Shown here: positions 6,055 to 44,641 of the stretch, in pieces
Layout of the letters: every line of letters starts with the position of its first letter
How positions within the stretch are numbered: the first letter of the stretch is position 1
From: Fimbriosthenelais zetlandica
Taxonomy: Eukaryota
Direction: 5' to 3'
DNA length: 64,000 bases
Assembly (NCBI GenBank): GCA_977030845.1
Contig: OZ365118.1
Span: 18,600,001 to 18,664,000, forward strand
Made by a program: the position numbers and the translations under genes
Notes under the pieces: generated by a model
Seen by the model: only the letters and a program-made list of their open reading frames with translations
Database searches by the model: none
What the model was told of the DNA's origin: nothing

Positions 6055-9000
6055 TTATCGTGTTATAGGCTGTACGCCCAGTGAGCGAGCCCCGGCCACT
6101 ATATCATCTCCTCCATGCTCCTCCAGGGTGGCAGGGTCGGGGTGGGTGTAATCATTGAGGAAGTAGGAGGTACCAGGGACGTCAGGAGGGAAGCCTGGAG
6201 GTAGACATTCTCGGGGGCGAGGTGTGAAGCTGAAACCAGGCGTCACTAGGAGTAAACTGAAAAAATAATACATTATACTTATATATAACAATGATGAGAG
6301 GTGCGGCAGGCTGGTAACATGGGCTCCTTCCTTCTATACATGGATGAGATAATAGACACTATACCCAGACCGATAAAACCCTTCATGTAACCGTCTTAAA
6401 CTAATACTACACCTGTGGGTTGTGGGATTGTTATCTTCTAGTGTAGGTACTTTACCTGTGGATTGTAGGATTGTTAGTACAGTGTATGGACTTTACCTGT
6501 AGTTTTTTGTTCAGGTAACAGCGTTTATAATTTACCTGTGGGTTGTTGGGCTGATGTTGATTTGTCTCGCCTCACTTGATGATTCAAACTTATTAGCCAG
6601 CGTCACATTGTGACCAAAGAGACAGTATCGCGGCATGACAGTCCCCACCACCCCGGCCAGCACTGTGCCCGTGTGGAGGCCGATCCGCATCTATAACCAA
6701 TAGATAATACACATCTTACTTATCACGATTGGCTTTGGGGAAAACATCAAACATTTTCACCTGGCTATACTTTAATATTGGCTTATGGGGATGAGGACTA
6801 GTATCCCTTTTTCGCTCAGTGGTTTGTCCATCCCTCCTTAACACAATTAAGCCGATAGAAATATGAGATGAGAGATAATTCATATAGTATATCTGGGCAT
6901 GGTCGACAGAGTAGCTGAGTATGGCAGAGTAATTGAGACCTGTATAGGTTTTCCATCGTGAGCTCTCTCATTGTGAGCGACCGCCATCATCTTGAGCGCC
7001 ATCCACGCCACCTGTTGGGCGTGCGTCTCACTAGCGCGATGTAATCCTCCCGCTACACAATAGGCGTCACCAATAGTCTCTATCTGTAACATGATGAGAC
7101 ACACCTGGTGAGAAAACACTGGTATTATGCTGTAAAAAACAAATAGACCCAAAGTAATTGACAGTCAAACCTCAGATACTAGACAATGTATAGGTAGTCA
7201 TTCATTCATTCATTCATTCATTCATTCATTCATGAGGATATGGCAGCATTGCATTTCATGTTGAGGTATGAGAAATTGTAAACATCGAGTAGTAGACCTA
7301 CCCTAGCTAGGAGAGTTAGCTCGCCTTACTCAGTAGTAGACCTACCCTAGCTAGGAGAGTTAGCTCACCTTACTCAGCAGTATACCTACTCTAGGAGAGT
7401 TAGCTCACCTTATAGACATCGAGCAGCTCACACACCATGTCAAACTGCGTGTAGAGAGAGTTGAGCATGTTGATAACTTGTAGAGGCGAGGCTGTAGAAC
7501 AGATGGCTGTAAACCCGACCAGATCAGAGAAGAGCATGGTGACATTCTCTACCATACTGGGTAATACCTGCTCCCCTGAAACACCAAACCATCTCACAAT
7601 GATACGTTAACACCAAACCACCTAACAATGATTAATGATAGAGATAACAATCTGGTTACCCGCTTGGTCGTTGTACTGGGAATGCCCTCCCCTATAATAA
7701 AGTATCTACCAGCCTCTTTACTGGCTTGGTCGTTGTACTGGGAATGCCCTCCCCTATAATAAAGCCTCTACCACTCTGTTTACTGGCTTGGTCGTTGTAC
7801 TGGGAATGCCCTCCCCTATAGTAAAGTATATACCAGTCTGTTTACTGGCTTGGTCGTTGTACTGGGAATGCCCTCCCCTATAATAAATCCTCTACCAGTC
7901 TGTTTACTGGCTTGGTCGTTGTACTGAGAATGCCCTCCCCTATAATAAAGCCTCTACCAGTCTGTTTACTGGCTTGGTCGTTGTGTTTGACGATGCCCTT
8001 CCTCATGATAAAGTATATTTAGAGTAAGTACATACCGAGCCAGAGTTTCCTGGCCACATGTCTGGGGAAGATGAGGTCTAGGAGTTGGATGTTGGTGTTT
8101 CTCTCGACGTCCACCGCGGCTGAGGCCGTCTCTATCTGCTGCTTCAGCTGCTCCATACGCTTCGTCAGCGTCACCTGGTGGAGAACACTTCACTTAGTGT
8201 ACACTTAGTCAGACTGCTGCTACTCAAACACTGTCTGCTACTCAAATATTATTAAGATAGTAATCTATTCCTACAGTGAGGAAAACTTGGAGAGAGAGAA
8301 AGAGAGAGATATAAGGAGAGACAGTTAGAGAGCCGAGGGAGAAGTCAGGGAGTTGTCAGGTAGATTCGGGTATAATCTGATGGATTACCTGAGCCTTGCT
8401 CTGTTGACCCAGCAGTATGAGATCACGGGTAGCATCATGTATGGGAATGTCTGATATATACAGACCTTTACCCAGTAACTGGTCGAGATGCTCCAGTACT
8501 GGTGTACCCAGGAAGAGGAAGGAACGCGTCTCAGACAGATACGTCATCTGTCCCCGCAGTGACGTGCTCTGTAATCATACTTATATATCACTATGACAGG
8601 TTAGATGTGTCAATGTAGAGATCAGATCGAGTAGACCATGATGAGAGTTTTTATTTGAATTATACTGGAGATTTCTACAAGTAGGTTTTCAAAAGGACCT
8701 GTAAATGTTAAAAGTACCAGTATAATGTGTTAAAAGGACCAGTAAATGTTAAAAGTACCAGTATAATGTGTTAAAAGGACCAGTAAATGTTAAAAGTACC
8801 AGTATAATGTGTTAAAAGGACCAGTAAATGTTAAAAGTACCAGTATAATGTGTTAAAAGGACCAGTAAATGTTAAAGTACCAGTATAATGTGTTAAAAGG
8901 ACCAGTAAATGTTAAAAGTACCAGTATAATGTGTTAAAAGGACCAGTAAATGTTAAAAGTACCAGTATAATGTGTTAAAAGGACCAGTGAATGTTAAAAG

Positions 9001-11038
9001 TACCAGTATAATGTGTTAAAAGGACCAGTAAATGTTAAAGTACCAGTATATACCGACCTGTGACTGTTGTCCCATCAGTGCCACCTTACTCCTCACCTCA
9101 CACCGCAGCTCAAACCTCTGGTTAACATGTAATAGTAACTCCTGGTAGCTCCACTCAACTCCCGGGCTGACCATGGAGAAATACTGACTGACTCTCAGTC
9201 CTGGCCTCAGTACGTGCGGGCTCAGCAGCCTCCTGATACTGTCACCAATCTGTGTCATCGTCATCTTATCATCTATAATGATGTGGAAGGGAAACGATCG
9301 ACAGATGGTCGCGACAGAGATGGGTAGAGAGCGGGGGTCGCGGGACAGGCGAAATGTGGAGAGGCCGGCTGTACTAACCCCTGAATCCACTCCTGTCCCT
9401 CCTGTCCGCCCCCTTGATGCCCCTGTCCCCCGGTCTGCCCCATGTTGTGACGGAGGTTGACAGTCGGCCCCATGTTGTGACGGGGGTTGACAGTTAATAG
9501 CTAGTATTGTATCACATTCTCTATTCTCCATACTTTTAATCCTAGTTTCCATGTTCTCACCCAGCTGTACGTGTATGTTGAATATTGTACTGGCAGTCTG
9601 AGTGATCACTCCCCGGACTACGCTGATAAAATCCGCGTTATGCGGGTTACTGATATACACGATCAGTCCTCCTGACTTACTCACTTCACAGTTAAATGAG
9701 AGCATGTCCAGATCTTCATCATACCGTCTCCGGCCACGGGATGACCGGTACCGTGTAGGACGGACACTATGACCATTAGCTCTCCGCTGACCATTGCTCG
9801 GCTGACCTGCAGGAATATAAGATGACTGTTAAAATGACCAGTAAGAGGCATAAGTGTATAAAGCCTGGGGCACATAGAGGCGATTCTAACTGACCTGTGG
9901 AGGCTAGTTTGGCATGAATGAGGTGGTGGAAGTCGTCCAGTGAGTTGAGGAAGCTGTGGAGATGGCTGGCGAGTGACCGCAGCTCCTGGTCATACCTCTC
10001 CATGGTCCTGGTCAGCAGGTACTGCCCCGTCTCCTCCAGTAACTCTCCCACGCCTATACCTGATGAGATATACTGATAATGATACATACTTCTATACCTG
10101 ATAACGATATACATCCATATAGGCGGCAACACATCAATCTATCGCCATCCAATTCCCCATTTCTAATTCCATTTAATAATTGAAATTGAGTCAGTGGTCA
10201 GCCTTACCTATAGACTGTTCAATGAGTATAGGATTGTATAAGCCTCACCTAATGCTCGACTGCTCTCCTCCCCTCTCTCCAGCACGCTGTTTATAGTCAT
10301 GTTGCTACCATGGATACAATTGTTGATGACGTCATCTTCTGAGTCAACTTGAGCACTGTCAGATCAAAATCATTTCAGAATAATTCACATTCAAATTTCC
10401 TTTGATAAGATAGACATCAAATCGAAGGAAATATTTTAAATTAAGTCAGAATCTCACCAAGTAAGTTCCTGATGTTTCTCTACACAGTGGAGCAATGCTT
10501 GGAGTAGAGAATACGGCTGAAATGTAAAATAAATGAGAGTAAAGAGGCTCAGACAGAGGTCAATGACTCAATGAGAGAACGCAGGACAAGTACAGTCACT
10601 AACAAGAACTGCTTGATAGGAGTTTTAGTTTCTCTGTTGACTTATAAGATCTTGTAGTTCTTGTTTTAGTTTCTTTGTTGACTTATAGGGTGACTTTATG
10701 TGCTGACTTACTGATGGCATAATGATGCTCTGTACAGCATCCACCATGTGGTCTAGTTGTAATCTCTTGTAATCTCCCTCATCTTCCTCCTCTCCCAGCC
10801 CCTGACTGCTGGCCACTGAGATATTACTGATCTTCCTGGCCACGCCCGTCACGCCTGACTGAACGTCCGTCTCCCTCCCTGCTGGCGACCCCTGACGAGC
10901 TGCTCCCGAGAACGGACACCCTCCCCCCTGGTGGCGAACTCCCTTATCACGCTCAGGGGAAGTAGACGAGGCATTATGGGTAATCATGCGGCTCACATCC
11001 GGGGCTTTGGTGGTTCCTGTCCTCCTGGTGCTCATCAT
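6055..11038 (-). CDS. GUCY1A1: Soluble guanylate cyclase alpha subunit, ~797 aa; exons 10712-11038, 10458-10516, 10249-10355, 9895-10059, 9058-9806, 8389-8568, 8036-8174, 7409-7575, 6940-7083, 6536-6690, 6055-6256
   Basis: All junctions canonical and in phase. Contains the N-terminal GCPFS motif, PAS/HNOB segment (FPFHIIID...[18 protein letters not shown]) and coiled coil. The cyclase domain has both metal-binding Asp ([18 protein letters not shown]) but GHNVTLANK lacks the catalytic N/R, as in alpha subunits. The alpha-type tail [18 protein letters not shown] is present. Start codon choice is uncertain because an acceptor precedes it at 11047-11049. The symbol denotes the GUCY1A1/A2 family. 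Confidence 0.95.
7295..7411. repeat. Short tandem duplication (~3 copies) that includes the sGC-alpha splice donor
   Basis: ctaggagagttagctc(a/g)cctta repeated; on the gene strand each copy reads TAAG|G(T/C)GAGCTAACTCTCC. Confidence 0.85.
7660..7985. repeat. ~62-bp minisatellite (~5 copies) in an sGC-alpha intron
   Basis: Unit ctggcttggtcgttgtactgggaatgccctcccctataataaagcctctaccagtctgttta. Confidence 0.93.
8697..9050. repeat. 41-bp minisatellite (~8.5 copies) in an sGC-alpha intron, abutting the donor at 9057
   Basis: Unit gtaaatgttaaaagtaccagtataatgtgttaaaaggacca. Confidence 0.95.
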
Positions 11039-11599
11039 ATGACTACCTGAGAAAGGTGAAGCAAAGAGGACATGATTAGAGATAACATACATGTATTATA
11101 GCTTCATAGCAAATATAGGTGAGAGCAGATGTGAGCAAGAGTGGACATGAGATGTGAGTAAAATAACATCATAGATTAAAACATATATATTTGAGGCTAG
11201 ATGAGGTCAACAAACACTGTGATTGAGGAGCAGCTAGCTTGTTCTGTAATGGATTAATTCAGAATGAACAATGAGTTTGTATACTTGTTAGAATGAATGG
11301 GGAGCAACTCCCTCTCAGTCTCCCCCTCCCTCGCTCCATCCCTCTCTCCATCCCCCACTCTCCCTGTTCGGTAAGTTTGCTTTTCCTTCCTGCGCTCTCC
11401 GCCATCTCGCCTCAAACCACTTCACCTCACGCCCGCCAAATGTCAGCTCTTGGTGTGAGCTGATTACTTTTCTTCCCCGCTCTCTCCCTTCCTTCCATCA
11501 TTCTCTAACCTCCCCCATCTCTCCACACTCCCGTCCTTCCATTCTCTCCCTTTACTCAGCCTGCCGCCATGTTTCTGTGTTCATCAGGCAGACTGCCTC

Positions 11600-13827: not shown

Positions 13828-13989
13828 GGGCGGGGGGCGCGGGGGGAGGGTCGGGGGGCGCGGGGGGAGGGGGCGGTCACTCATATATAGATGACGGACG
13901 CACTGGTCAGCCAGTTATTGCTGGACATCAAGACTGACCGTTAAGACGTGACGTGGAACACACCTTGGACATTTTCATTTACTCATAGG
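13828..13989 (+). promoter_or_regulatory. Probable promoter and non-coding first exon of Gly/His-rich gene A
   Basis: GC boxes at 13828-13877, TATATA at 13884-13889, an Inr-like CCAGTT ~27 nt downstream and a donor TAG|gttagt at 13990. The matching acceptor is at 15120-15122. An alternative closer start near 15015-15060 cannot be excluded. Confidence 0.5.
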
Positions 13990-14685
13990 TTAGTATCACT
14001 ATTTTTTGTATTCTTTATTAAATTTCTTTAAAAGTAAAAGTATATATTGATCATGAAATGTTCAATAGTAGGCCTAATCTCTCATATTTGAAGAATTCCT
14101 GTAAATTTGAATTCATGAAATCATTTGAAAGCTGCTGTAACGACAATCTCTTCTGCTGTATATCTAAACCCTACCCCTTATCTAACCCCTGTCCCACCCT
14201 ACCTAACCTTATCCCGACCTAAAGTATTTCTGACATGTATTTCTAGTTTAGAGAGATGGGGAATGGTTGTCTTGAGTTATGAATGTTAAGGATCATGGTT
14301 TATTTGATGATGTATTCAGGAATGTTTGATCTCCCGTGTAGACATGTTTTATTGTCATCTTTTATTGTCATATAGTCTGGTCATCCTGATCGTTAATGCA
14401 CACTAATCTCATGTATATGGATCAATCACTGAGATGTGAGGTATTAAATAATCCATGACTATAAAGTATCTGAAAGATGGAGGTCATTAACTGCTCACTC
14501 TCTCCTTAAAACGCACGTCGCTACTAAGCGGATAGAACCCTCACTTCTGGTATAGACTTGAGCCTGGATCCACCGGCCCATAGAAAGGCAAGGGAGGGTT
14601 CTGTCAAGTTTAGTCACCGACAATTTACTTAACAATCCCCGCCACCAGTCAGGGAGGTCATTATGCTCCCAGTAAATGACCAGTT

Positions 14686-14990
14686 TTGGTAGCTATAATG
14701 TCTGGAAGGGTCGGGTGGATACCAGCTCAATCAGAAGGTCCCGGGTTCAAACCCTCCACTCCTCACAATCATCTGTACTAGCTCTGTCTGCTCATTAAAT
14801 ATTCACATCAATCATAAAACATCCACAAATCAGAGAAGATATCCCGAGGCCTGCTCATATAGCGGCATCACGCGGCCTGCCCATATAGCGGCGGTTGTTA
14901 CCGCCCGGGGGCAGCGTCTCACTATGACGAGAACCATGACATCAAACTCGTGGCTCTCCTTAACATTCCCACTTCATCATTTATACAAAT
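14686..14990 (+). mobile_element. Degenerate tRNA-derived SINE-like element
   Basis: Pol III box-B GGTTCAAACCC at 14744-14754 with an A-box-like TAGCTATAATG upstream, then a GC-rich body. The 3' boundary is approximate. Confidence 0.4.
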
Positions 14991-15145
14991 ACCAGTCATT
15001 AAAATAATAAACTCATATAAGATAATGTTCAGTTCTTTCGGCCTTAAGATCTCTGTGTAGGTACCCATAGTACGTATGTCTAGACTTAATAACCTTCAAA
15101 CTAAATGTTATTTTATTTACAGGTGCCTGAAACAAAATTGCAAAG

Positions 15146-16031
15146 ATGAGAGAAGGCCTCCTATTGGCCCTAATCTCCCTGGGCGTGGTCTGTATTAGCC
15201 AATCAGAGGCGGGCTATGGTGGAGGAGGAGGAGGAGGTCACGGCGGAGGTTATGGCGGAGGTCATGGAGGAGGTCACGGCGGAGGTCATGGCGGAGGTCA
15301 TGGAGGGGGTCATGGAGGAGGTCACGGAGGAGGTCATGGCGGAGGTCACGGTGGGGGTCACGGAGGAGGTCACAGAGGTCACAGAGGAGGAGGGGGTCAC
15401 GGAGGAGGAGGAGGTGGTCACGGAGGAGGGGGGCACCGAGGAGGGGGGCACGGAGGAGGGGGGCACGGAGGGGGTCATGGAGGCGGGGGTGGACATGGCG
15501 GCGTCAGTTTTGGAGGTATTTATAACCTTGTTTCTTACATAACTTACATCTGATCATAAGATTCTCTTGGATGTAGAACATGGTATCAACATTTGTTATC
15601 ATTTGAAGCTGTATATAATATAATCTGACTTTAACTTGTATTCATTTCTTGCAGGGAGCAGTGTGAAGTTTTCTGCAGGTCGAGGCTCCAGTTTCGGTGG
15701 TTATGGTGGTGGTGGGGGAGGTGGAGGGGGAGGAGGCGGGGGAGGTCGGCGTGGTGGGGGAGGTGGGGGTGGACATAGTGGGGGAGGTGGTGGTGGTGGG
15801 GGTGGGTATGGTGGTGGGGGTGGTAATCCAGGGTTCCGTGGGGGACCTCATGGTGGTGTATTTGTTGGTTTTGGTGGGGGTGGTGGCGGTGCCAGTTACG
15901 TCCCTGAAGCCTTCAGTCTCAATAGTTACTTAAAGAGTGGCTCGTCGTACGGAGGTGGGAGTCAGTCTGTACCCAGTGCTTACAGTGTGGGTAGTTATCT
16001 ACAGAGTGGAGGGAGTTACGGCCATTATTAA
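15146..16031 (+). CDS. Secreted Gly/His-rich protein (gene A), 248 aa; exons 15146-15515, 15655-16031
   Basis: Signal peptide MREGLLLALISLGVVCISQSEA, then 10 consecutive GGGH units within a 19-His Gly-rich domain. A phase-1 GT-AG intron follows, then a poly-Gly/Tyr/Phe domain and a duplicated C-terminal VPxA[FY]SxxSYLxSGxSYG motif. Gly codons vary at the third position, as expected for coding DNA. AATAAA at 16396-16401. Confidence 0.88.
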
Positions 16032-18846
16032 ACATACTCTAACACACACCCCGCCATCCTACACTACACTTAGATACAGTAAGTATACTGCACCTCACAG
16101 TACCTCACATCATGCCTGCATTTCATGTTTGATTTTGAACATATTCCATATAATGAAATAATAACAATTCACTTGTATTTTTCAGATCTAAAAAAGTTAA
16201 CCTGTCTCTGCTGAATAATGAAGCTCACACCGGAGACATCTGGTGGAGATGTGAGGAACGAGAGGATGATGTAATGGCCGCCATGGGGAGACGAATCAGA
16301 TGCTAACATCTCTCCTCCTCTCATATCAATTCTCATTAACAGACCCCCAAACTACTCCCCCACAATGGTTAATGGCCACAATGGCCAAGAATGTAAATAA
16401 AAGTTATATTTATAATGAATATATTATATGTCTTCCTTTAATTTCGTTCATTCTAACATGGAGTGCTGTACTGAGTGCCGTATTCTGCCTATATGACACT
16501 CGTCACATACCAGTGAATTCGTCACATATTAATTCATGCTCCTCATCGTGCCATACTTTCAGCATATAGCTCATTCCGTGTGGTGATAGAGGCTATTACA
16601 GATGGCAATTATTATAGTTTCCCTCCTTGACACCAGTCGTTATCAATGGCGCTACCGTCAACTATTTGTACTCAGCTATGTTTCCCTCTTACTATTTTTA
16701 CCAAAGTGACCACACTAGCGCCTGATGAGACCTTTAGGTCGAAACCACTTATCCCATGTTGAGCTACATTTAATCCATATCAAATAAACTATTTATTACT
16801 GCTCTAAACCTGATTACATGCTATATAGGCATGAAAAGGACCTAAAACCATTATTCATAACCTTAACCACCTTTCCAAGCAACCCAACTTTAAGGTTTCC
16901 ATGGGACCACTAACCACTGTCCATTTATGACATAACTATTGTCAAGGTGAGCACAGGTGGAATGTTGTGTGGCAACCCAGCCTTATTGTGGTAGCGCAAA
17001 CAGGCTGTCTATATAATAACACGTCTGTCTCAGCTATGTTTCCACTTCCTTTTATTCATTTTGTCACTTCCAACCTATGGCAATACACATTTAAACAGGA
17101 AGTAGTTGTGTCTAAAAGTGGACGTTTTTCTATAGTTTTTCTATATACATGTACTTATATACTAAGTGGCAGGGCACTCTCAGAGCAAATACTACCCATA
17201 ATATTTCCCTCCCAACTACATATTCCCCAGCTTACTATTCCTATGGATGAACAATATTTGGGGTGGAATAAATAGTGGATTATCATATCAGTGAATGAGA
17301 AAACATGATATGAATGAAAAGATGATGAAAGTAGAGTGAAGTTTATGAGACATCAGTAAGCTAACTGTACGAGGTCTCGCCTGCTGATCCACTATTCACC
17401 ATTACGGTAGAGTGAGTGTTCATTATGTTATGGCAGGTTTTTTCACATGGCATTCATCAGGGCTATCTATATGATAGCCTCGAACAATACGCTACTCACT
17501 TGTTCATCATCCCAAAAGACTTAAGTCTCAAGAAATGTTTTGAATGTTTCCACTAGCCCAAATGACTGAATCATGAAAGATCTGTGACTTTAGAGTGGAG
17601 GTTATATAGAGTTATAGAGAAGTGCCAGGTATGAGTGAGTGGGGGTTGGGATGGTCAGTTTATAGCATTATATGGTTTAATGTTTGTTTAATGATGAATG
17701 TATCATTGTCCCTCATGTCCTACAGCCATGCTCCTCCCCGTGCTACAGCTGTTAGACAATAGGCCACACAATAACCTGATCTGTACATCTATAATTATTA
17801 ATGATTCTCCTTATAAATGATTAAGATCAATCATCAACCTGACCCTCTCCTCTTCCACCTGTCCCCACCTTATTCTTATTCTGAATATTTATAAGAATAT
17901 CCCATATTTATTATAATTATTGGCCGTTTATTGTCTTGTACCTTAATCATAATTTCATAGGAAAACATCCCATTCCGACATGAGCGCCTTTTAGACAAGT
18001 CTTACATTTGTAAACTCAAATATGACATGGCCAAAACCAGCTCTTATTATCTATAAAATATTCCCTATTTACTCTCGATAATTTGAAATTAAGTGATAAA
18101 TAATGACTTGATGTTATATTTTGAGTTGAGGGTACTTAGTACATGTATGGTAATGATCAGTTCATATACTAAGATGTATAAAGTTGTCACAGACAATGCT
18201 TCCCTCGCTGGCAATCACTATTCCCCATTATCTGACGTAGCCTTAAGGAAGGTCACCTCGCTTTCCCAGTAGACTTCCTACGGTTAATCAGATGACTTTT
18301 GCCTTTAAATGATGACATTTCTACGATACCTATGAATTATGAAAACATGTATTCTGACAGAATAAGATGTATTAATGATGTATGGATGTATTAATGTGAG
18401 GCCGGGGGCGGGGTGGTTTGATTAGGGTATGAGGGAGTATATATAGAGGAGAGGTGATGGTAGACAATCATCACAATCAACTCAACTTCTGATAACAGCA
18501 GCAACAGTCGGAGCAATCCCACACCACACACTAAAGTGAGTATAACTTTTACTATAGACACCTATAACTTACTATATAGACACCTGCCTATTTATAACTT
18601 ACTATAGAAACCTCCAGACATATATATATAACTTCTTGGGTCCTGGAAACTGTTATAAAACCTCAATGCAACTTAGTAAATCAGGAATTCTTGTGTCCTT
18701 TGCCTTACGTCTCACTTTACCTACACTTACGATATAATGCGACGTTATGTCTATGTTTTCCTTTACCTATCTTATCTTATGCCTTAAGTTACGTCTATAT
18801 TTGGCTTTCTATGCCTTACGTTGTCCATGTTTACGTTACAGCAATC

Positions 18847-19193
18847 ATGATGAAGCAGTGCATCTTCCTCCTGGCCGTCATGGTCGCCCTTGCAGCCGGT
18901 CAGTATAAACCCCACTAATCTTTACTTCATGTGTCGTACTGTCATCCTTTATTATTATATTGAGTTCTTTATTGAGTTTATTATACATTTTGTATTTGTT
19001 CTCTTCAGCTCAGTATAACAGTTATACCGGCTACAATCCCCAATACTCCAGCTACGGCCACGGTAACAACCAAGGACAGGGATACGGATACGGCTATGGA
19101 TACGGCCATGGCGGCAATGGCAATGGCAATGGCAATGGTTACGGCTACGGTTACGGAAGGAGCAACAGCGGCTACGGCTATAGTGCTTATTAG
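18847..19193 (+). CDS. Small secreted Gly/Tyr/Asn-rich peptide (gene B), 78 aa; exons 18847-18898, 19009-19193
   Basis: GC box plus TATATATA (18438-18445), and a non-coding exon ending at 18535 (AAA|gtgagt). The signal-peptide exon MMKQCIFLLAVMVALAA makes a phase-1 junction to QYNSYTGYNPQ...GYGYGYGYGHGGNGNGNGNGYGYGYG...SAY*. AATAAA at 19383-19388. Confidence 0.85.
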
Positions 19194-19922
19194 TGGAATA
19201 ACACTACATACATGGCCTACCTCTTCACAATGGTGGGCCTTCCTATTATATTGCTAATTATGATTATTATCTTTCCAACTATTAGAAATGTAAGTGTAAG
19301 CTATCAATACTGATTCATTCTCCATCTTTTCCAGGTGTCAAGGAACGTGCCTCAAGACATGCGTGGTGGTTGATTATTCAAAAATAAAATGACATTAAAA
19401 CCTATATATTTTGTTCGTGATTTTTGATACTTTGTTTATTTCATTTATTTAATCTTTGTGCTATCCAAAAACCTCAGTTAAAACCATGACTCGAACTGAC
19501 TGAGAGTTCTCAGACGGCTTCCAGAGGGATTGTGTATTGTTAAAGTGTATTGTCACGTTCCACCTGTTTTATACAAGCTCAATATCCCCAGGTATCCCCA
19601 GATATCACTAGATATCCCCTTATATCACTAGATATCCCCAGATATCACTATACTGGCCGCCTGTCACGGCTGACCTGTCGTCACGGACCCACCATTATGT
19701 CCTCCTGTCAAGCGTGACGTCACGAACGCTCGTTAAGTCACGTGGGGAGGAAGCTGCACCTTTTCCATGGTAACAGATGAGTAGAGGAATAGATGTTAAT
19801 ATGGTGGTGAGGTATATAAAGCCGGGAGGTGGGCAATGGTCATCATCACAGCTGTATCTGCCCTCACCTGAGGTAGTCAAAGTATTATAGAACTTTATAC
19901 ACAGGAGAAAGGTGTAGACGAC

Positions 19923-21008
19923 ATGGATATGAGACGAGAGATGCTATTGGCTGTGGTGGTACTGGTGACTTCAATCCTCCACCAATCACAGGCCATGGGA
20001 CAAAGTCCAGTCCAGGTTGGCCCAGGCTACAGCCAGGGTCACCACGATCCACCCCAGGCTGCCCCAGGCTACAGTCAGCCTGCTCCAGGCTACAGCCAGC
20101 CTGCCCCAGCCTTTACAGAGTTTACAGGGCCTCACTCCATGTATAGTGGACCAGGGATGACCCCTGACAGTCATATGTACGGTCACTTTACACCTGGATT
20201 CACACCTGGTGCCGGTATGTACCATACTGGACATGATACCGGTATGATGCCCCACCCCATGCCTAATACAGGCCTGTATATACACGACCCTAACACAGGT
20301 ACTCACCTAGTCCCCCACCCAGACATATACAGGCCTGACGCCGCGGGCTATGGTCAGTCAAATGGTCACTCAATGAACTATAACCCTACAGGTGGACTAA
20401 CAGTGAAGGCTGGTGAGATGATAGGAGCTGGACATAATGTGAGGGCTGGGTACGGTCAGCCTGCAGGCTGGACTGACCAATACTCAGGTCCTATTGATGG
20501 CCTGGGTCCGGCTGCAATCAATGGACATAGCCTGGGTATGAGTGGATATGGCCACAGTGGTCAATTGACCATTGGAGGGCATAAAGTGACCGGTGGAGGG
20601 AGTCCGGTATCAGCGGATTACACGCCCGCTGGGTCTACTCCTGGTTATGGTACAGTCCACAGTCAGATTATACCAGCATCAGAATATGACACAGTCCACA
20701 GTCAGATTATACCAGAATATGACTCAGCGAGAAGTAGTGGATATATACAGACAATGAGTAGTGGACAAGTGAGTAAAGCTGGCAAAGTGAGTAGCAGTAT
20801 GTATGGACAGTCAGGTAGTCATGGGTACGATGCCAGTAGTCATGGATACGGTGCCAGTAGCCATGGATACGATGCCAGTAGTCATGGATACGATGCCAGT
20901 AGCCATGGATACGATGCCGGTAGCCATGGGAAGGGCACAAATAATGGAAAGATCTACCTGAACCGGGGAAATAGCCTTGGCTATAACGAGGTGCGATGGG
21001 GAATATAA
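19923..21008 (+). CDS. Secreted His/Tyr/Gly/Pro/Ser-rich protein (gene C), 361 aa, apparently single coding exon
   Basis: TATATAAA at 19813-19820 and a 361-codon ORF with signal peptide MRREMLLAVVVLVTSILHQSQA. It has GYSQ(PAP) repeats, a duplicated TVHSQIIP and five (G/S)SHGY(D/G)A heptads (20814-20930). AATAAA at 21126-21131. Confidence 0.87.
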   Translation: MDMRREMLLAVVVLVTSILHQSQAMGQSPVQVGPGYSQGHHDPPQAAPGYSQPAPGYSQPAPAFTEFTGPHSMYSGPGMTPDSHMYGHFTPGFTPGAGMYHTGHDTGMMPHPMPNTGLYIHDPNTGTHLVPHPDIYRPDAAGYGQSNGHSMNYNPTGGLTVKAGEMIGAGHNVRAGYGQPAGWTDQYSGPIDGLGPAAINGHSLGMSGYGHSGQLTIGGHKVTGGGSPVSADYTPAGSTPGYGTVHSQIIPASEYDTVHSQIIPEYDSARSSGYIQTMSSGQVSKAGKVSSSMYGQSGSHGYDASSHGYGASSHGYDASSHGYDASSHGYDAGSHGKGTNNGKIYLNRGNSLGYNEVRWGI

Positions 21009-24000
21009 ACTCTATAAACTATAAACTGTATGAACTATAAACCCTAGAACTCTGTCTCGTCATGTCGACCTTATCCGTTCATTTATCATGGATTATTTTG
21101 TATGATTTTAGACATGTTATTTTGCAATAAATTTCATAACAAAAATAACCCAAGTGCAGACTAAATATTTAGATGTCATTTGATATCTGTGTGGCCCCAG
21201 GAGCATTGGTTATTTCTACGTTATTATATCATGATGTATTTGTATAGGCTGTGTTCCTATCATAATGTCAAGATCTGTCAAGTGACATCTAGCTGAGTTT
21301 AGGAATACTAACTGGTACTAAGGTGATTGTAGTAAGCTGGAAGTGATGCTAATGTCTGAAGACAGTGTGAATTTAATTTGGTCTCAATTCCGGACACGGG
21401 GAGGATTTCACTTCCGCTGTTCCCTGAGCCTCCTCCTAGCGCCATCTATGTAGACGGAAGTCAACTTAGGTCTAATTCATTTAGTCTGAGCCCACGTGAT
21501 CAGAGGTAGGCCAGCTGTGATAGGAGGAGAGGTAGCCAATGAGATGTCTCCACAGTGGCGTCCCCTGCTGATTAGATTGGACACTTTCAGACTAATTTTG
21601 TTGTAATCTGATAGATGTGTGAATTATACCATACAGAGAATGTGAACAAACTAATTAGCATGGATAGGCTACCCTCGATCTACTCTACACTATTTTCATA
21701 CTATATTTGACGAAATGACAATATTTTGAAATGAACAAATACTGTATAAGATTGCCAGTAGTATATAATTAGTAAGTAGAGGGAAATACTTCCTGATCCA
21801 GTCAGTAAGAGCGAGTATTTCTATCACTCTGCTCTCTCCATCTCTCTGTGCCTTCATCTCATGTAAAGTGGTTTCTGATTGGCTGAAGTATTTGGTGATG
21901 GATGGCCTGCAGGATGTAAAGCCTGCTCTGATTGGTCACGCAGCGTGTCGGACATGTTGGATGTATTCGGAAATCTCCACAAAGGTGGATGGGAAAGTAA
22001 TCCTGTCCTCGAAATATCTACAGGTGTTTTTACATGGGCTGATATTTATTTCACCTGGCTGGAATATTTCCCTTTGTGAGATGGAAGTTGTGTACTTATG
22101 TTATAATATTTGCCATGCCTACTCCACCCCCTACACCCCACCCATTACCCACCCCAACCCCCGCCTCTTGTAATCTATACCTCCTCCATCAGCCTCATGT
22201 TTTTTGTTCACGTCTCATCAAACTTCAAAGAGAGTATGAAGTTAATCCTGTAAGAGTTAGCCCAGGAGTTAGCTGAGAGATTAGAGCCTCTACTTGACCT
22301 CTACCTGACCTCTATATACCTCACCAGCTGACTCTTTATATCTAACGTCACTGTACGTCTGTCACCATGGTGATCTAGCGTACTGTGACGTCACTGTACC
22401 CTACTTCTTCATGGAGATCTGGTGTAGTACTTTACAGTCTGTCCACCTTTCCCATAATGCATCACGGCTCCTCCATTGAATGTTATAAGAGGTACTTCCT
22501 GTTCACCACGTGACAGTCAAGCGACCAATCAGAACACAGCCTGATATAGAGCAGAGATTAGTGAGTAAATCACCAGGCCTCATCCTGTTACACCAGTCCG
22601 GATTAACGGCCGATTATAGATTAAAGGGATTAAAGTGAATTCCTCCCTCTACCCTGTAATCTCCTACCGTCAGAATGAAGCAGAAATAAAGGAGTAAAGT
22701 GGATATATTGATGACTAATGCTCGATCCAATTTAACCTGCTATTAGTCTCCTACATGACTATAGACTCCTCTATTGACTGCTGATAAAGCCAGCATTTAT
22801 ACCATCCTGTGCTCGGGTTATTATTCAGGTACATGCTTTGTAGGTCTATGATGATATCTACGTTTTTATAACATTTATATTTATTCGAGAGAAATGCATT
22901 TGTTGCTGACATTTCATAAAGCCTCCATACAAGGATAATGTTCAGTTACAAATATGATCTCACACACTCTTATACCATATTGCAAATGATATAGGCTTAT
23001 TCCATATTGTAAATGATATATAGGCCATGTTGCAAATGATATATATAGGCTTACGCCATGCTATAAATGATACAGGCCCTGTTTCCTCTTATCACTGTCC
23101 GTTCATGTTAATAACCGTTAACAGACTTGTTGATGTAGGTGAAGCCTGGTGCACTGGTTGACTCCAGCCTTCATCCTGCCTCTGTGTGGAGGTGTAGGGT
23201 GAGAGTTGAGGCTGTTTGTACTCATTGCTTCCTCTTCTACTAAGTGTTCCAATCTAAACCATTAGGACCATGTATACATCACCACTACTCCTCCAACTCC
23301 CTGCTAACTTCTCCTATACTGTGATGAGAATGCCGGCTACAAGTGTTAGAGTGCTAAATGGTGCTCTCTGCAGGTCTACAGAGATCAACAAGGCTGAACT
23401 AATCTTCTATTGTGCTGAACTCCTAACTAACTATTTGAGAGTTCCAGTCATTTTGATAGCTGATAGCTGAAGCTAAAGCTGCCATCTCCGACTCAAAAGT
23501 TCAGGGAGCTACAGAACTATTAAGTAGACTTTCTATACAGGGCAGAAGTTTCTACTTTATTCTAAATGCTCATTTTAAAAGCATTTTTGAAATCATGAGC
23601 TATTGCAGTGAGCAGTGGCCTGGGGTGGGGAGGTGGGGAGGTGGGTCCGGGTGTATGGAGGGTAGGGAGGCGGGGGCGAGGAGCCAGCATAGTAAAGCCC
23701 CCCGTGAAGTCTGAATGCCTCTCATTAGACTTTAGACTTCTGGTTTCCCACCAGGAAACATGGCTTCACTGACACCACTTGTACATGTCAATCTATAGAG
23801 GATATACGCGTCAAAATACCATGAATCATCATGTATAAAGTGGCTATATTTACTCTATCTGCTTCTCATCTCATTATAACTCATACATTTATACATTCAT
23901 CGTGACAGTATGAGCAGGTAATGAGGGCTATACTGTATTATACTCTGATGAAATGATTTTAACGATGCTCTTATAGCATGTCTGGTTCAGAGAATATCTA

Positions 24001-39375: not shown

Positions 39376-41147
39376 GTCACACCTCTCACCACCTCGTCAT
39401 CAGATCAGATAAAGGCATCAATTTAGATCAAACTGTCTTCATGCCCATCACTGGCCGAGCCACACTTAAAGCGAGCAGCCCCCAACAAATATACAGGCAA
39501 CAAGGGCAGGCCAATCATTCATTACCTTTGTTTTATTTCAACAAGGGCCTCCGGCCACTAAGCAAATAGAAATTAATTTGATTAAATTTAAGTGTAAAAG
39601 ATCAAATTTAAAAATAAAATCGGTCAGCCCCTTCAGGCCAACTAAGAAAATATAATGTTACGTAGGCCTACATTGATTATTGGGACAAAATATTGTGAAC
39701 ATTTTAAAATTTATTTATTTCAGAAAGGTCCCTCGGCCCCCGTGGGCTAATTAATCAAATATAACGGGTACGGGACGGGTACCTGGTCATTGATTCAGTG
39801 CTAAACACGAAAATGTAAACAAAATCCACAAACATCTATTTGAAAAAAAGACATATGGTCAAGACCCCCTATAGATATGGGTCAATACTAAACCCATTTT
39901 CTCTTCGTGCTATTATAGCATGTATAACAATGTGTAGGCTAGGCCTAGGTCTGTGGCTATGCAGGGACACAGTCCTGAATATTATAAAAGTATCTCTTTC
40001 AGATATATATATTTTGTTTAATATTTCATTTCATTTCATACATGTCAATGCATGTCAGTGAATTCGCAAACAAATTATATTAAATCATGACAATAACACC
40101 GAGGCTAAACATTAGGCCCTGACAAATTTTGGTCTTCAATCAGATACACTATGTCACTGACAATATAAATCAATAATAATTAGTATTTCCGTAAGTTAAA
40201 AGCAAATTAAAATTATTATGGCACAGCCTACAATGTACAATATCTGCTGTATGACAATTGACATACATATATGCCCTGATTTTGGCCATACTATATTGCG
40301 ATTTCACTGTCACCGATAGGCCCTAAACTTAAGATAATTATAATAGGCCTATTACAGGCATTTATATGATCTAGGCCTATAGGGAAAATTCCAACTGTTG
40401 TTAGTGTTAGCATTTAATCAATGTAGACCTATAGGCTACTTTATATTTTCTTAGTTTGCCTACAGGGGGTGATCGATTTTATTTTTAAATTTAGTCTTTT
40501 ACCGTAGGCCTAGGCCTAAAGACTCTACCATATACTAATACCACCATCCTTCCCTCTCACTGCCGGCCTGCCCTCCACTCGGCCTCCGACAACAAAACCC
40601 GGGATTACCCTATACTGCCTTACTGGACATCGGCAGACATAGCCTATACTGACAGAGGCGGAAGAATATAGGCCTACCACCTTCTAACTCTTCTATAACT
40701 GTTCAAAACTTATCAGGGGACAGCAGGGTTAAATTATTATAATCCCATCTAGGAAAATAACCCCCATAAAAATGCAAATAAATTGTATTTTAGCGTGGAG
40801 TAATGATAATGCAATCCATTGAAGGTATTATGGAGTCAAAAGATAAAAGTAAAGTTGAAAAATAGCATGTGTATGGTTTATAAAATTATTCAACTTTGCA
40901 CCCCCCCTACTGAAAACCGACCTTCTTTTGTTCGAGCATAGCCATAGGCTGCAGGCATTTTATTGTGTTTTTATTCTACTAGCGGTTACCCGTTTCCAAC
41001 GGGATTACAATACCCGTTTCCAAAGGAATTAAAATGAGGGGCGAATTCTGTGGGTCTAGTGTTATTAGTGGTTGTGGTTGGTTAGGTGAGAAATAAATAC
41101 TGAAACTTACAGGATGGGTGTAGAATTTCTGTTTAAAGGACAGTTCT

Positions 41148-41700
41148 GTATACAACGTTTGTTCATATGGTGACCCCCATCTCTTCCCCCTCCTCCTCCC
41201 CCTATGGTCATCCTAACCTCCCGCTGCCCGCTGACCCCCATCTCTTCCCCTCCTCCTCCTCCCCATCCTCCTCCAACCCCCCCCCCCCCCCCCCCTTCCT
41301 CCGAGTCCTCCTTCTCTCCCTCTGCTTACCCCGGAAAGTTTGTCCCTAATAAATAGATATCCCCCATCCCCCTTCTCATGTAGCTATATAGGCCTACAAC
41401 GTTTGTTGTTGTCATATGGTGACCCCCATCTCTTCCCCCTCCTCCTCCCCCTATGGTCATCCTAACCTCCCGCTGCCCGCTGACCCCCATCTCTTCCCCT
41501 CCTCCTCCTCCCCATCCTCCTCCAACCCAGTTCTGTATACAACGTTTGTTGTTGTCATATGGTGACCCCCATCTCTTCCCCTCCTCCTCCTCCTCCTCCT
41601 CCTCCCCATCCTCCTCCAACCCCCCCCCCCCCCCTCCGAGTCCCCCTTCTCTCCCTGTGCTTGCCCCAGAAAGTTTGTCCCTAATAAATAGATATCCCCC
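41148..41700. repeat. C-rich nested tandem duplication (2-3 copies of a 130-250 bp segment)
   Basis: tatacaacgtttgtt...catatggtgacccccatctcttccccctcctcc recurs at ~41148, ~41395 and ~41537. Confidence 0.8.
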
Positions 41701-43789
41701 TTCTCATGTAGCTAAATGTTTGTTCCCAAGTAAAGCAGATGTGTATATAGTCCAGAAGTGGCCAGAAGTTTTCACCTGTGAGTGAGTGGGGTTTCCTTGT
41801 GATTCACACACCCATATATGGTCCTATGGGGTTTCCCTGTGATGAAAGCGAGGCTGTATGCGTCGTCACGCACCCATATATGGTCATAAGGCGGGGCTTC
41901 TGGGAATCACCCTGGTTTGGTTAGGGGGCACTGAAGGGAAAGTTGCACTTGTTCCTTTTCACGAATAGCATGTGTCACAGGCATAAAATGGGAAAACCAA
42001 GGGCGTCATGTCGAGGAGAAAAAATCAAAGATTGGAAGGATATAAGAAGCTTGGCAGAAGAGGGCGTTCCGCAAGAGCCTTTAGCATTATAGCAATAAGC
42101 AGCAATAAGCTACCCCGGGGGGCTCCAGCATTACTATAGAGGATGTTTTGTCACTTACACTGGATGACTGCCCTGTCTATGACTCAGAAAGCTCTGATTT
42201 TATCTTTTCCTTACCAGCCGCTATCTTTGCTAATCGACTCGCCTGTTTTTGATGTGAGAAAATGCCCTTTTCTGTCATGGGAAGGCATGAAACTTTGCAA
42301 AATTGGAGCCGCCATTTTGGGGTCGGGTGGTCGTGCTGGTCCCCGTTCCCCACGGCTTCCGGTTTAGTGTCGTAAATTTCAATGGAAAATTTCTTGGAAA
42401 TGGAAATTTTTTCCCCCTATCCAACCACCAAAGACATGTTAGAGCAAACATAGGTGCATGATATTTATAGATTTTGGGCAAAATACATGTTTTAAAACAC
42501 AAACACATGTCGTAAAATAACAATTTGGTCACGATTGGTGACATATGCAAATGAGCCCGCACTCCAACGGGCTAACTCCAACGGGCTAACTCCAACTCCA
42601 ACTATTTAAGTAGGATAGTAATGACTAGCTACAGATATTTAATTCTGTCAAGGCAGATTTTTTTTCACACTATGACATAAATCTGTGCATTGTTGAACAA
42701 AAAGTGGAGGAGAAATGTCAGGAGAGTAATGTGAGATGAGATGACGTCATGATCACCATGGTTACACCTGCCCGCTGTCATGACAACACACCGACTTCCG
42801 GTGAAATATGTCATAAATACCGGCAGAGGTAGGGTAGATGAGGAAGCCGTATAGACCTACCTATAATCCATCCCTCACCTCCCCCATCCCCTCTCACCTC
42901 CCCCATCCCCTCTCACCTCCCCAATCCTCTCTCCCCTCCCCCATCCCCTCTCACCTCCCCAATCCTCTCTCACCTCCCCCATCCCCTCTCACCTCCCCAC
43001 TCCTCTCTCCCCTCCCCCATTCCCTCACACCTCCCTTTTTCTATGGGAGATGGCCAGCACTAACAGCAGTAATTCAATTCCTCACTGTTAATCCTTCTGT
43101 CCTGCTGGATTAAAACAACAAGTCTTCCCATCTTCTGAGCAGAAAGTACTACCTTTTTAGAGCAACAAGTCTTGCCATGTTCTGTCACCTTTTGAGCAAC
43201 AAGCCTTGCCATGTTCTGTAACCTTTTGAGCAGCAATCCTTGCCATCTTCTGAGAGGAGAGGAAAGCATTTCTTTTAAATGATTGAAGACTTGCCAAGTC
43301 ATGAGCGAATTCAGAGCAGTTGGCTTTACCATATTCTCAGACTGAGCAGGTCTTACCAGCTTGAGAGCAATTAATGTTTCCATTTTAGTTTCAAATAGTT
43401 GGGTTGATATTTGTCATCGCTCTGCCATGTTACAGTAAGTTTCCGTCCATCTCACTCCGACTTATCATGAAGAAGCAGACAGAGTTTGATGGAGGCTAGA
43501 CGAGGACTGTGATGATCATTGCCACCACCAGATGGCCCCCCGTCCCTCAGGTGGTGCGCTTAACACACCAACCATTAGCATATAGACCAGGTCATCCTCC
43601 ACTCGTTATCCTCCGGTGGGGAAAAGTGTCTGGGCATTCCTCCAGCTGTCTATTTTGTCCCCCCCCCCCCCACCCCCCCCCCCCCCCCCCCCACCCCCGT
43701 CACTGCTGTGAGGGCATTATACAGTTACCCTGCTGTATTATATGTCTGTGTTAAGGTCATACTTGGCCAGTCTGTACCTGACATTCCTC

Positions 43790-44070
43790 TTTCTGCTTCT
43801 CTCCCTTTCCCTTTCTCTTTCTCTCTCTTCCTTTGTTTCTCTCTATCTCTTTTTCCATCTCACTCTGCCTCTCTCGATCTCCCGCTTTTTCTCTCCCTCT
43901 CTCTCACCTCACTTCCTCTGTCTCTTCCTCTCTCCCTCTCTATCTATCCCTCTTTCTCAATCCCTCTCTCTCACTTTTCTCCGTCCGTCTCTTTCTCTCT
44001 ATCTATCCCTCTCTTTCACTTTTCTCTCTCTCTCTATCTATCTCTCTCCCCTTGTCTCCCTCACTTTCTC
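43790..44070. repeat. CT-rich low-complexity microsatellite
   Basis: Nearly pure C/T tract that follows poly-C runs at 43659-43692. Confidence 0.9.
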
Positions 44071-44641
44071 TAATACATGCATGTATCACAGTGTAGGCTG
44101 CAGACTCCGGTATCACCAAATTATGTGTACACCTCAGCAAATTTGAAAATTTGACATCAATATATTCCCCACTGATTAAACGGGCCGATATAAAACATCT
44201 GGCTGCTTACACAAGATCCGCATAGGATGATTTATAACACTGAAATGATTGCTTTTTATTGATTTGATTGGATAAAGTAAATGTTTAGAAAGTGTACGAG
44301 TAATATTCTGTGATTGTGAATGCATATTGTTGATGGGATGTTGTGTATTATAGGCCTACAGTCTCATATCAGACATCACTCATGGACCGATCGTCTCTCA
44401 ATTACACACTCATACACTGAAAGAGATTTAAAATCAATTGTCGAGGAGGAGGATTGCGTTTTCTGTCATTCTCCTCCGTCTCTCCTCCTTTATCGAGGCT
44501 TGTCTTCCATGGTAAAGTCAAGACTCCACTGCTGCGATTTTGCTTACGACACTATACTGTGACAAAGGTAATGGTTTTGTCGCAATGGAAACTATACCAG
44601 TGGAAGACGGCCTTAAGGCCTTGAACACTTCAACTGCAATT

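What the first reader, a model, noticed from the sequence alone, without database searches (positions are those of the whole stretch)
13828..21131. Cluster of three secreted, Cys-free Gly/His/Tyr-rich protein genes: candidate undescribed biomaterial locus
Seen: three adjacent same-strand genes within 7.3 kb, each with a TATA-type promoter and a signal peptide. Their mature chains are low-complexity and lack Cys: (GGGH)n, (GY/GN)n and SSHGYDA repeats. Known: Gly/His-rich proteins harden polychaete jaws with Zn or Cu (Nereis Nvjp-1, Glycera MTP) and squid beak (DgHBPs). Gly/Tyr(DOPA)-rich proteins form mussel and sandcastle-worm adhesives and shell organic layers. Inference: this is a co-regulated kit of structural proteins cross-linked through His-metal and Tyr/DOPA chemistry instead of disulfides, sitting between the two sGC genes.
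Basis: partly seen in the sequence, partly recalled or inferred. Interest (0 to 1): 0.85.

Follow-up and report, generated by a model that had tools for sequence, protein, structure and literature searches.

The report
Three orphan secreted glycine-rich protein genes
Three neighbouring genes of an invertebrate (probably a worm) encode secreted, floppy, cysteine-free proteins rich in glycine, histidine and tyrosine. They look like building blocks of some outer material, but they have no relatives in any database searched, no expression data could be found, and a role in defence against microbes is not excluded.

Summary
Window 13.8-21.1 kb carries three + strand gene models (A 248 aa, B 78 aa, C 361 aa). 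Each has a TATA box, a signal-peptide-like N-terminus, canonical splice sites where spliced, a poly(A) signal, and a Cys-free low-complexity mature chain. They lie in the ~39 kb gap between two divergently oriented soluble guanylate cyclase genes.

No homologue was found for A or C in searches of up to 15 billion proteins. The only hits to C are chance matches to its heptad repeat. Pfam finds nothing significant, and AlphaFold predicts disorder.

- The conserved Nvjp-1/Nai11527 modules are absent.
- A breaks the Glycera MTP rules, with Gly runs up to 14 and 10% His.

All three meet the operational definition of "silk-like structural proteins" (signal peptide, at least 25% Gly in an 80-residue window). 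That class is mostly lineage-restricted and mostly material-forming.

A is strongly cationic and C is anionic at seawater pH, while both are cationic at pH 5. This fits pH-switched coacervation, but that is inference only. B and C share a core-promoter pattern; A does not.

Gly/His-rich and Gly/Tyr-rich antimicrobial peptides are a live rival for A and B. No transcript evidence could be obtained. The scan has noted similar Gly/His/Tyr-rich secreted genes elsewhere in this genome. Verdict: real, ordinary-kind orphan genes whose function is unproven.

The parts
13831..13890 (+). Gene A promoter: perfect 21-nt x2 G-rich direct repeat (13831-13871) and TATATAG (13884-13890)
13910..13988 (+). Gene A non-coding first exon (start inferred about 30 nt after the TATA box; donor GT at 13989)
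   Evidence: inferred, no transcript data
15123..15515 (+). Gene A exon 2: ATG 15146, signal peptide, twelve 12-nt units in register (eleven GGGH, one GGGY) and further Gly/His runs
15655..16031 (+). Gene A exon 3: poly-Gly runs (up to 14), then a Ser/Tyr-rich tail with a duplicated S-Y-L-x-S-G-(S/G)-S-Y-G motif; stop at 16029-16031
16396..16401 (+). Gene A poly(A) signal AATAAA
18438..18535 (+). Gene B TATA box (18438), initiator-like ATCATCACA at +29 (18467-18475) and non-coding first exon
18842..18898 (+). Gene B exon 2: ATG 18847, signal peptide, phase-1 donor
19009..19193 (+). Gene B exon 3: 60-residue mature peptide with N-terminal Gln and GY/GN runs; stop
19383..19388 (+). Gene B poly(A) signal
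19813..19850 (+). Gene C TATA box (19813) and the same ATCATCACA at +29 (19842-19850)
19923..21008 (+). Gene C single-exon CDS, 361 aa: signal peptide, three PGYSQ-type units, Met/His/Pro-rich part, Gly-rich middle, duplicated TVHSQIIP unit, five SSHGYDA heptads (20814-20918), short C-terminal tail
21126..21131 (+). Gene C poly(A) signal

Best explanation
A, B and C are three real, lineage-restricted genes for secreted, intrinsically disordered, glycine-rich low-complexity proteins. They belong to the class called silk-like structural proteins.

Most likely mechanism (inferred, not shown):
- The proteins are made in gland or epidermal cells and released as fluid precursors.
- They condense outside the cell into a solid or gel-like material. 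Candidates are jaw, bristle, cuticle coat, tube lining, glue or egg envelope.
- Condensation would be driven by the abundant Tyr and Gly, which give aromatic stickiness and phase separation.
- A charge switch would add to this. At pH 5 both A (+28) and C (+15) are cationic and repel each other. At seawater pH the histidines lose their charge, A stays at +7 and C becomes -10, so they can pair, with B as a neutral aromatic filler.
- Later hardening through Tyr cross-links and His-metal bridges is possible but untested.

B and C share a core-promoter type and may be expressed together. A has a different promoter.
For: - Gene structure: TATA boxes, signal-peptide-like N-termini, in-phase GT..AG introns and poly(A) signals.
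- Coding constraint: among the twelve 12-nt repeat units in register in A (eleven GGGH, one GGGY), 14 of 15 differences from the consensus are synonymous third-position changes, which is 4 of 5 variant types.
- Predicted disorder: mean pLDDT is 39 for C and 50 for the tail of A.
- All three meet the SilkSlider definition. Maximum Gly per 80 residues is 75% for A, 26% for B and 27.5% for C, and each has a signal peptide (PMC4944945). In that paper's silkworm test, 145 of 178 such proteins had known or likely material roles, and most were lineage-restricted.
- Charges: pI is 10.1 for A, 8.1 for B and 6.2 for C, with the pH-dependent net charges given above.
- The feature-based nearest clusters are arthropod cuticle proteins, keratin-9-like, prisilkin-39-like, KRTAP and enamelin. 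The scores are weak (at most 0.83) and are leads only.
- B and C share TATATAxAG..G.GAGGTG and ATCATCACA at exactly +29 from the TATA box. In the +8..+40 stretch 18 of 33 bases are identical, against a mean of 9.1 for random TATA-site pairs (1.3% reach 18). The 9-mer occurs only 4 times on both strands of the window.
Against: - There is no transcript, proteomic or tissue evidence. No sequencing run could be listed.
- There are no homologues, so conservation cannot vouch for function.
- A's His content (10% overall, 20% in the repeat block) is well below that of metal-hardened jaw proteins.
- No motif is shared by all three promoters.
- A, B and C are not paralogues, so their adjacency may be coincidental.
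- The charge-switch mechanism is calculated from composition only.
Confidence: 0.5

Rival explanations
1. Host-defence effectors. A would be a long Gly/His-rich antifungal-type protein like beetle holotricin 3 or tenecin 3. B would be a Gly/Tyr-rich epidermal peptide like nematode NLP/caenacin peptides. Such genes typically sit in small, fast-evolving genomic clusters and are induced by infection or wounding.
For: - A contains the exact 12-residue string GGGHGGGHGGGH that is printed for holotricin 3. Like that peptide it also has Gly runs with interspersed Arg and ends in a Tyr (PMC5715947).
- A is strongly cationic, with pI 10.1.
- NLP and CNC peptides are secreted, Gly- and Tyr-rich, clustered and rapidly diversifying (PMC2453101, PMC6780910).
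- Orphan status and low complexity fit fast-evolving immune genes.
Against: - Mature A has 226 residues, against about 80 in the insect peptides.
- B is uncharged at seawater pH and lacks the YGGYG/YGGWG motifs and the basic residues of NLP/CNC peptides.
- C (337 residues, acidic, modular) does not look like an antimicrobial peptide.
- No Gly/His- or Gly/Tyr-rich family is listed among the annelid antimicrobial peptides in the review read.
- The resemblance is compositional, not demonstrable homology.
Confidence: 0.2
2. Three unrelated neighbours with different jobs rather than a kit. They would be adjacent only because the large gap between the two guanylate cyclase genes tolerated new genes arising from, or expanding through, simple repeats.
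For: - There is no DNA or composition-independent protein similarity among A, B and C.
- A's promoter differs from those of B and C.
- In a distant relative, the 37 kb upstream of the beta-1 exon holds no such ORFs.
Against: - All three share the same strand, the same secreted Cys-free Gly/Tyr/His-rich design, and TATA promoters.
- B and C share a core-promoter pattern in register.
- The relative examined is distant (66% identity in a conserved enzyme) and of unknown taxon, so the absence there says little.
Confidence: 0.2
3. Not functional genes: open frames created by G-rich minisatellites that happen to follow ATG codons, or decaying or unexpressed loci.
For: - No transcript evidence and no homologues were found.
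- Inside the repeats every frame is open.
Against: - Each of the three has TATA box, signal peptide, in-phase canonical introns and a poly(A) signal in the right order.
- C is a 361-codon ORF, most of it non-repetitive.
- The variation among A's repeat units is mostly synonymous.
Confidence: 0.1

Closest known systems
Silk-like structural proteins (SLSPs; McDougall, Woodcroft and Degnan 2016, PMC4944945)
   Same: Signal peptide plus a domain with at least 25% Gly in 80 residues; disordered; mostly lineage-restricted; independently evolved.
   Different: SLSP is an operational class, not a homologous family. Membership predicts a material role only statistically.
Nereidid jaw proteins Nvjp-1 / Nai11527 (PMC9999432, PMC13120676)
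   Same: Secreted, Gly/His-rich, Tyr-containing, Cys-poor, disordered, and from worms. An HGGVS string follows the Gly/His run in both A and N. aibuhitensis Unigene946/947.
   Different: The conserved non-repetitive modules (F-x-S-x-Y-x-Y-K-G-Y-D, GGYVKV, GNYDD) are absent from the whole window. A has 10% His rather than 16-27%, and almost no Asp/Glu rather than about 15%.
Glycera jaw multi-tasking protein MTP (as described in PMC9999432)
   Same: Secreted chain made of short Gly/His repeats.
   Different: MTP has 49% Gly and 40% His, never more than two Gly in a row, and no Tyr. A has a GGGH unit, Gly runs up to 14, 10% His and 11 Tyr.
Holotricin 3 / tenecin 3, insect Gly/His-rich antifungal peptides (PMC5715947)
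   Same: A shares the exact (GGGH)3 string, Gly runs with Arg, a cationic character and a Tyr at the C-terminus.
   Different: The insect peptides have about 80 residues and come from beetles. No statistical homology can be shown. A has a long extra poly-Gly and Ser/Tyr-rich half.
Sabellariid tube-cement proteins, GY-rich / H-repeat / SY-rich classes (PMC12621633)
   Same: A set of secreted GY-rich, His-bearing and Ser/Tyr-rich proteins used together. Oppositely charged partners, with a pH-triggered setting step, are a model for that glue.
   Different: The cement GY-rich proteins are polybasic, but B has no Lys. The cement polyanion is phosphoserine-rich, but C is only mildly acidic. No sequence similarity was tested or found.
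Nematode NLP-29 / caenacin clusters (PMC2453101, PMC6780910)
   Same: Small genomic clusters of secreted Gly/Tyr-rich peptide genes that evolve fast.
   Different: Those genes are paralogues carrying YGGYG/YGGWG motifs and basic residues. A, B and C are not paralogues, and B has GYGYGY and GNGNGN runs instead.

Membership tests
Silk-like structural proteins (SilkSlider definition) | N-terminal signal peptide | tested here: met
   Hydrophobic cores with small residues at -3/-1 in A, B and C; confident N-terminal helix in C. No dedicated signal-peptide predictor was available.
Silk-like structural proteins (SilkSlider definition) | At least 25% Gly within an 80-residue window | tested here: met
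   A 75%, C 27.5%, B 25.6% over its whole 78 residues; criterion from PMC4944945.
Nvjp-1 / Nai11527 jaw proteins | Conserved non-repetitive modules shared by N. aibuhitensis paralogues (F-x-S-x-Y-x-Y-K-G-Y-D; GGYVKV; GNYDD) | tested here: not met
   Motifs were read from the paper's Dataset 1. A regex search over all six frames of the window found none.
Nvjp-1 / Nai11527 jaw proteins | His 16-27 mol% with Asp+Glu about 15 mol% | tested here: not met
   A: His 10%, Asp+Glu 0.4%. B: His 3%. C: His 7%, Asp+Glu 6%. Reference values from PMC9999432 and PMC13120676.
Nvjp-1 / Nai11527 jaw proteins | Expression in jaw pulp and presence in the jaw | not testable with these tools
   No sequencing runs were listed.
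Glycera MTP | [quoted passage not shown] | tested here: not met
   A: longest Gly run 14, His 10%, 11 Tyr. Rule taken from PMC9999432.
Insect Gly/His-rich antifungal peptides (holotricin 3 type) | (GGGH)n-type repeats in a secreted cationic chain | tested here: met
   The string GGGHGGGHGGGH is shared with the printed holotricin 3 sequence. A has pI 10.1.
Insect Gly/His-rich antifungal peptides (holotricin 3 type) | Small mature peptide (about 80 residues), infection-induced, antifungal activity | tested here: not met
   Size: mature A has 226 residues. Induction and activity are not testable here.
Nematode NLP / caenacin antimicrobial peptides | YGGYG or YGGWG motifs in basic Gly/aromatic peptides | tested here: not met
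   B has GYGYGYG and GNGNGNG, no YGGYG/YGGWG, and a net charge of about 0 at pH 8.1. Definition from PMC6780910.
Sabellariid cement proteins | Polybasic Gly-rich repeats (GY-rich class), His-repeat basic proteins, expression in cement glands | tested here: inconclusive
   A is polybasic through Arg/His. B lacks Lys. No cement sequences were compared, and the taxon and expression are unknown.

The most novel reading that the evidence does not exclude
The locus encodes a genomically linked, three-component, pH-switched coacervate system. It would consist of a His-gated polycation (A), a His-gated polyanion (C) and a neutral aromatic filler peptide (B). Together they would build a worm material not yet characterised at the protein level (for example bristle matrix, jaw coat or tube lining) without phosphoserine, lysine or cysteine chemistry.
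Probability: 0.15. Interest if true: 0.65.

Novelty: new member of a known kind. Interest (0 to 1): 0.33.

Why it matters
If the three proteins prove to be co-secreted components of one material, they would give a compact, Cys-free and Lys-free recipe for a histidine-gated, self-condensing protein mixture, which is of interest for bio-inspired materials. It would also add a genomically linked example to a field where components are usually found one at a time from gland transcriptomes. As it stands, the locus mainly shows that this genome carries many unannotated, lineage-restricted low-complexity secreted genes that homology-based annotation will miss.

Tried and rejected
Searches that found nothing useful:
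- Homology search for C: word-indexed search, no hit. Exhaustive phmmer over 1.84 billion representatives gave 11 hits, all to the heptad repeat of unrelated proteins.
- Homology search for A exon 3: no hit.
- Exact look-up of C in public assemblies: not on record.
- Pfam on all pieces: nothing significant.
- ESM Atlas feature search on C, A exon 2 and mature B: only weak look-alikes.
- Sequencing-run search with C and with A: none listed, so no read mapping was possible.
- A motif shared by all three promoters: none beyond chance.
- Paralogy among A, B and C at DNA level: none.
- tRNA and Rfam scans of the window: nothing.

Synteny:
- The closest beta-1 sGC relative (84% identity) sits on a 1.1 kb contig.
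- The next (66% identity) lies on a 3.45 Mb ENA contig. I walked 37 kb upstream in four steps and found neither a second sGC gene nor any Gly/His/Tyr-rich ORF.
- That relative is too distant and of unknown taxon, so the result is uninformative.

Not done:
- The spliced A and B proteins could not be handed to the large searches as whole proteins because they have no single reference. Only exon pieces were searched.
- The organism could not be identified here. "Annelid" rests on earlier follow-up notes from other windows of this genome.
Full report
**What is there**

The interval 13.8-21.1 kb holds three + strand gene models.

- **Gene A.** A TATA box lies at 13884, behind a perfect 21-nt x2 G-rich repeat. 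A short non-coding exon ends at 13988. The two coding exons are 15123-15515 and 15655-16031, joined in phase across a 139-nt GT..AG intron. The product has 248 residues. After a signal-peptide-like start, the mature 226 residues are 59% Gly, 10% His, 9% Ser and 5% Tyr, without Cys. They comprise twelve four-residue units in register (eleven GGGH, one GGGY), then looser Gly/His/Arg runs, poly-Gly runs up to 14 long, and a Ser/Tyr-rich tail with a duplicated motif.
- **Gene B.** TATA box at 18438; coding exons 18842-18898 and 19009-19193. It gives a 78-residue precursor. The 60-residue mature peptide begins with Gln and is 33% Gly, 25% Tyr and 15% Asn.
- **Gene C.** TATA box at 19813; a single CDS 19923-21008. 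It gives 361 residues with PGYSQ-type units, a Met/His/Pro-rich part, a Gly-rich middle, a duplicated TVHSQIIP unit and five SSHGYDA heptads.
- **Poly(A) signals** follow at 16396, 19383 and 21126.
- **Cysteine.** The mature chains contain none. The signal peptides of A and B contain one each.

**Are they genes?**

Inside the G-rich repeats every frame is open, so ORF length there proves nothing. The better evidence is as follows.

- Each locus has, in the correct order, a TATA box, an ATG, a hydrophobic leader with small residues at -3/-1, in-phase canonical introns and a poly(A) signal.
- C is a 361-codon frame that is mostly non-repetitive.
- Among A's twelve repeat units in register, 14 of 15 differences from the consensus are synonymous third-position changes, which is 4 of 5 variant types. 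This points to constraint on the protein. Because repeat units copy each other, it is only modest statistical support.

No transcript evidence could be obtained. No sequencing run was listed for C or for A, and the exact product of C is not on record in public assemblies.

**Context**

The neighbours are two soluble guanylate cyclase genes in divergent orientation. One has exons from 11092 down to 6379 on the - strand. The other is a beta-1 orthologue with exons from 51033 to 57839 on the + strand. A-C occupy the first 7 kb of the ~39 kb gap between them, and no other sizeable ORF with a domain lies in the rest.

The organism was not identified here. Earlier follow-ups on other windows of the same genome call it an annelid. 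The same scan has noted several other secreted Gly/His/Tyr-rich genes elsewhere in this genome.

**Relatives**

None were found.

- C gave nothing in the word-indexed search.
- An exhaustive phmmer search against 1.84 billion cluster representatives returned 11 hits. All were confined to residues ~270-340, and they come from unrelated proteins carrying similar x-x-x-G-Y-D-A heptads.
- A's C-terminal exon gave nothing.
- Pfam found nothing significant.
- Feature-based Atlas look-alikes score at most 0.83. They are arthropod cuticle proteins, keratin-9-like, prisilkin-39-like, plant Gly-rich wall proteins, KRTAPs and enamelin. These are structural low-complexity proteins, but they are leads only.
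- AlphaFold models C (mean pLDDT 39, only the leader helix confident) and A's tail (pLDDT 50, no secondary structure) as disordered. These were single-sequence runs, so this is weak evidence.
- A, B and C are not paralogues of one another.

**Synteny**

The nearest beta-1 relative (84% identity) is on a 1.1-kb contig. The next (66%) is on a 3.45-Mb ENA contig. Walking 37 kb upstream of its beta-1 exon showed no second sGC gene and no Gly/His/Tyr-rich ORF. Given the distance and the unknown taxon, this says little.

- **Nereidid jaw proteins.** In the N. aibuhitensis data set they share conserved non-repetitive modules (F-x-S-x-Y-x-Y-K-G-Y-D, GGYVKV, GNYDD). They have 16-27% His and about 15% acidic residues. 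None of the modules occurs in any frame of the window, and A has 10% His and almost no acidic residues.
- **Glycera MTP.** It has 49% Gly and 40% His, never more than two Gly in a row, and no Tyr. A violates all three rules.

So A-C are not members of either family, although they could still work in a similar way.

**What they do match**

They fit the operational class of silk-like structural proteins: a signal peptide plus at least 25% Gly in an 80-residue window (A 75%, C 27.5%, B 25.6% over its 78 residues). In the paper that defined the class, most such proteins had known or likely roles in extracellular materials, and most were lineage-restricted and independently evolved (PMC4944945). 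That sets the prior for my best explanation.

**A possible mechanism**

This is inference from composition only.

| Chain | Size | pI | Net charge at pH 8.1 | Net charge at pH 5 |
|---|---|---|---|---|
| Mature A | 18.9 kDa | 10.1 | +7 | +28 |
| Mature C | 34.8 kDa | 6.2 | -10 | +15 |
| Mature B | 6.4 kDa | 8.1 | about 0 | about +3 |

(All values.)

Histidine deprotonation on release from an acidic granule into seawater would therefore turn two mutually repelling polycations into an attracting pair. Tyr-rich B, and the FUS-like G-Y-(S/G)-Q units of C, would favour phase separation. This is the logic proposed for sandcastle-worm cement and for His-rich beak and jaw proteins (PMC12621633, PMC9999432). 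Nothing here shows that A and C ever meet.

**Co-regulation**

No k-mer is shared by all three promoters beyond chance. B and C, however, align in register from the TATA box.

- Both read TATATAxAG..G.GAGGTG and carry ATCATCACA at exactly +29.
- In the +8..+40 stretch 18 of 33 bases match, against a mean of 9.1 for random TATA-site pairs in the window; 1.3% of those pairs reach 18.
- The 9-mer occurs only four times on both strands of the window.

B and C thus share a core-promoter type or ancestry. A, with its G-rich repeat, does not.

**Rival reading**

- A contains the exact string GGGHGGGHGGGH printed for the beetle antifungal peptide holotricin 3. It resembles that peptide in style (Gly runs with Arg, a cationic chain, a C-terminal Tyr).
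- Secreted Gly/Tyr-rich peptides in small, fast-evolving clusters are the hallmark of the nematode NLP-29/caenacin defence genes.
- Against this, A is nearly three times longer than the insect peptides. B is uncharged at seawater pH and lacks the YGGYG/YGGWG motifs. C does not look like an antimicrobial peptide at all.

I put this rival at about 0.2. I put the structural-material reading at about 0.5, "unrelated neighbours" at about 0.2 (this overlaps with the others), and "not functional genes" at about 0.1.

**Verdict**

Co-regulation of all three, His-metal/DOPA chemistry and any link to jaws remain untested, and kinship with the named jaw proteins is excluded. This is a new member of a known kind, of moderate-to-low interest until expression or proteomic data exist.

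Noticed in passing
window 52438-55500: A 21-nt minisatellite of about 144 copies (92% matches) fills most of the intron between the beta-1 sGC exons at 51373-52326 and 56006-56251.
   Followed up: partly
window 6379-11092 (-) and 51033-57839 (+): Two soluble guanylate cyclase subunit genes lie head to head about 39 kb apart. The + strand one is a clear beta-1 orthologue. The subunit type of the - strand one was not resolved, since it matches alpha-1 and beta-1 structures about equally.
   Followed up: partly
window 13831-13871: A perfect 21-nt x2 G-rich direct repeat (CGGGGGGCGCGGGGGGAGGGT) lies immediately upstream of gene A's TATA box. It could hold GC-box sites or be G-quadruplex-prone. It is about 2.7 kb from the first coding exon of the divergent sGC gene.
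   Followed up: no
proteins P0001 and P0006: Unrelated secreted proteins from public data carry long arrays of x-x-x-G-Y-D-A/T heptads. P0001 is a 973-aa protein that looks like a trypsin-type serine protease and ends in about 50 such heptads. P0006 is a Cys-rich secreted protein with T-T-A-G-Y-D-T repeats. This suggests the G-Y-D heptad has arisen repeatedly.
   Followed up: no
window 41100-44200: A pyrimidine-rich low-complexity tract on the + strand gives long spurious Pro/Ser/Leu ORFs and strong negative GC skew.
   Followed up: no
window 14690-14760: The 1.1-kb 5' UTR intron of gene A contains a tRNA-like B-box string (GGTTCAAACCC), possibly a tRNA-derived SINE. ARAGORN finds no tRNA in the window.
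   Followed up: partly
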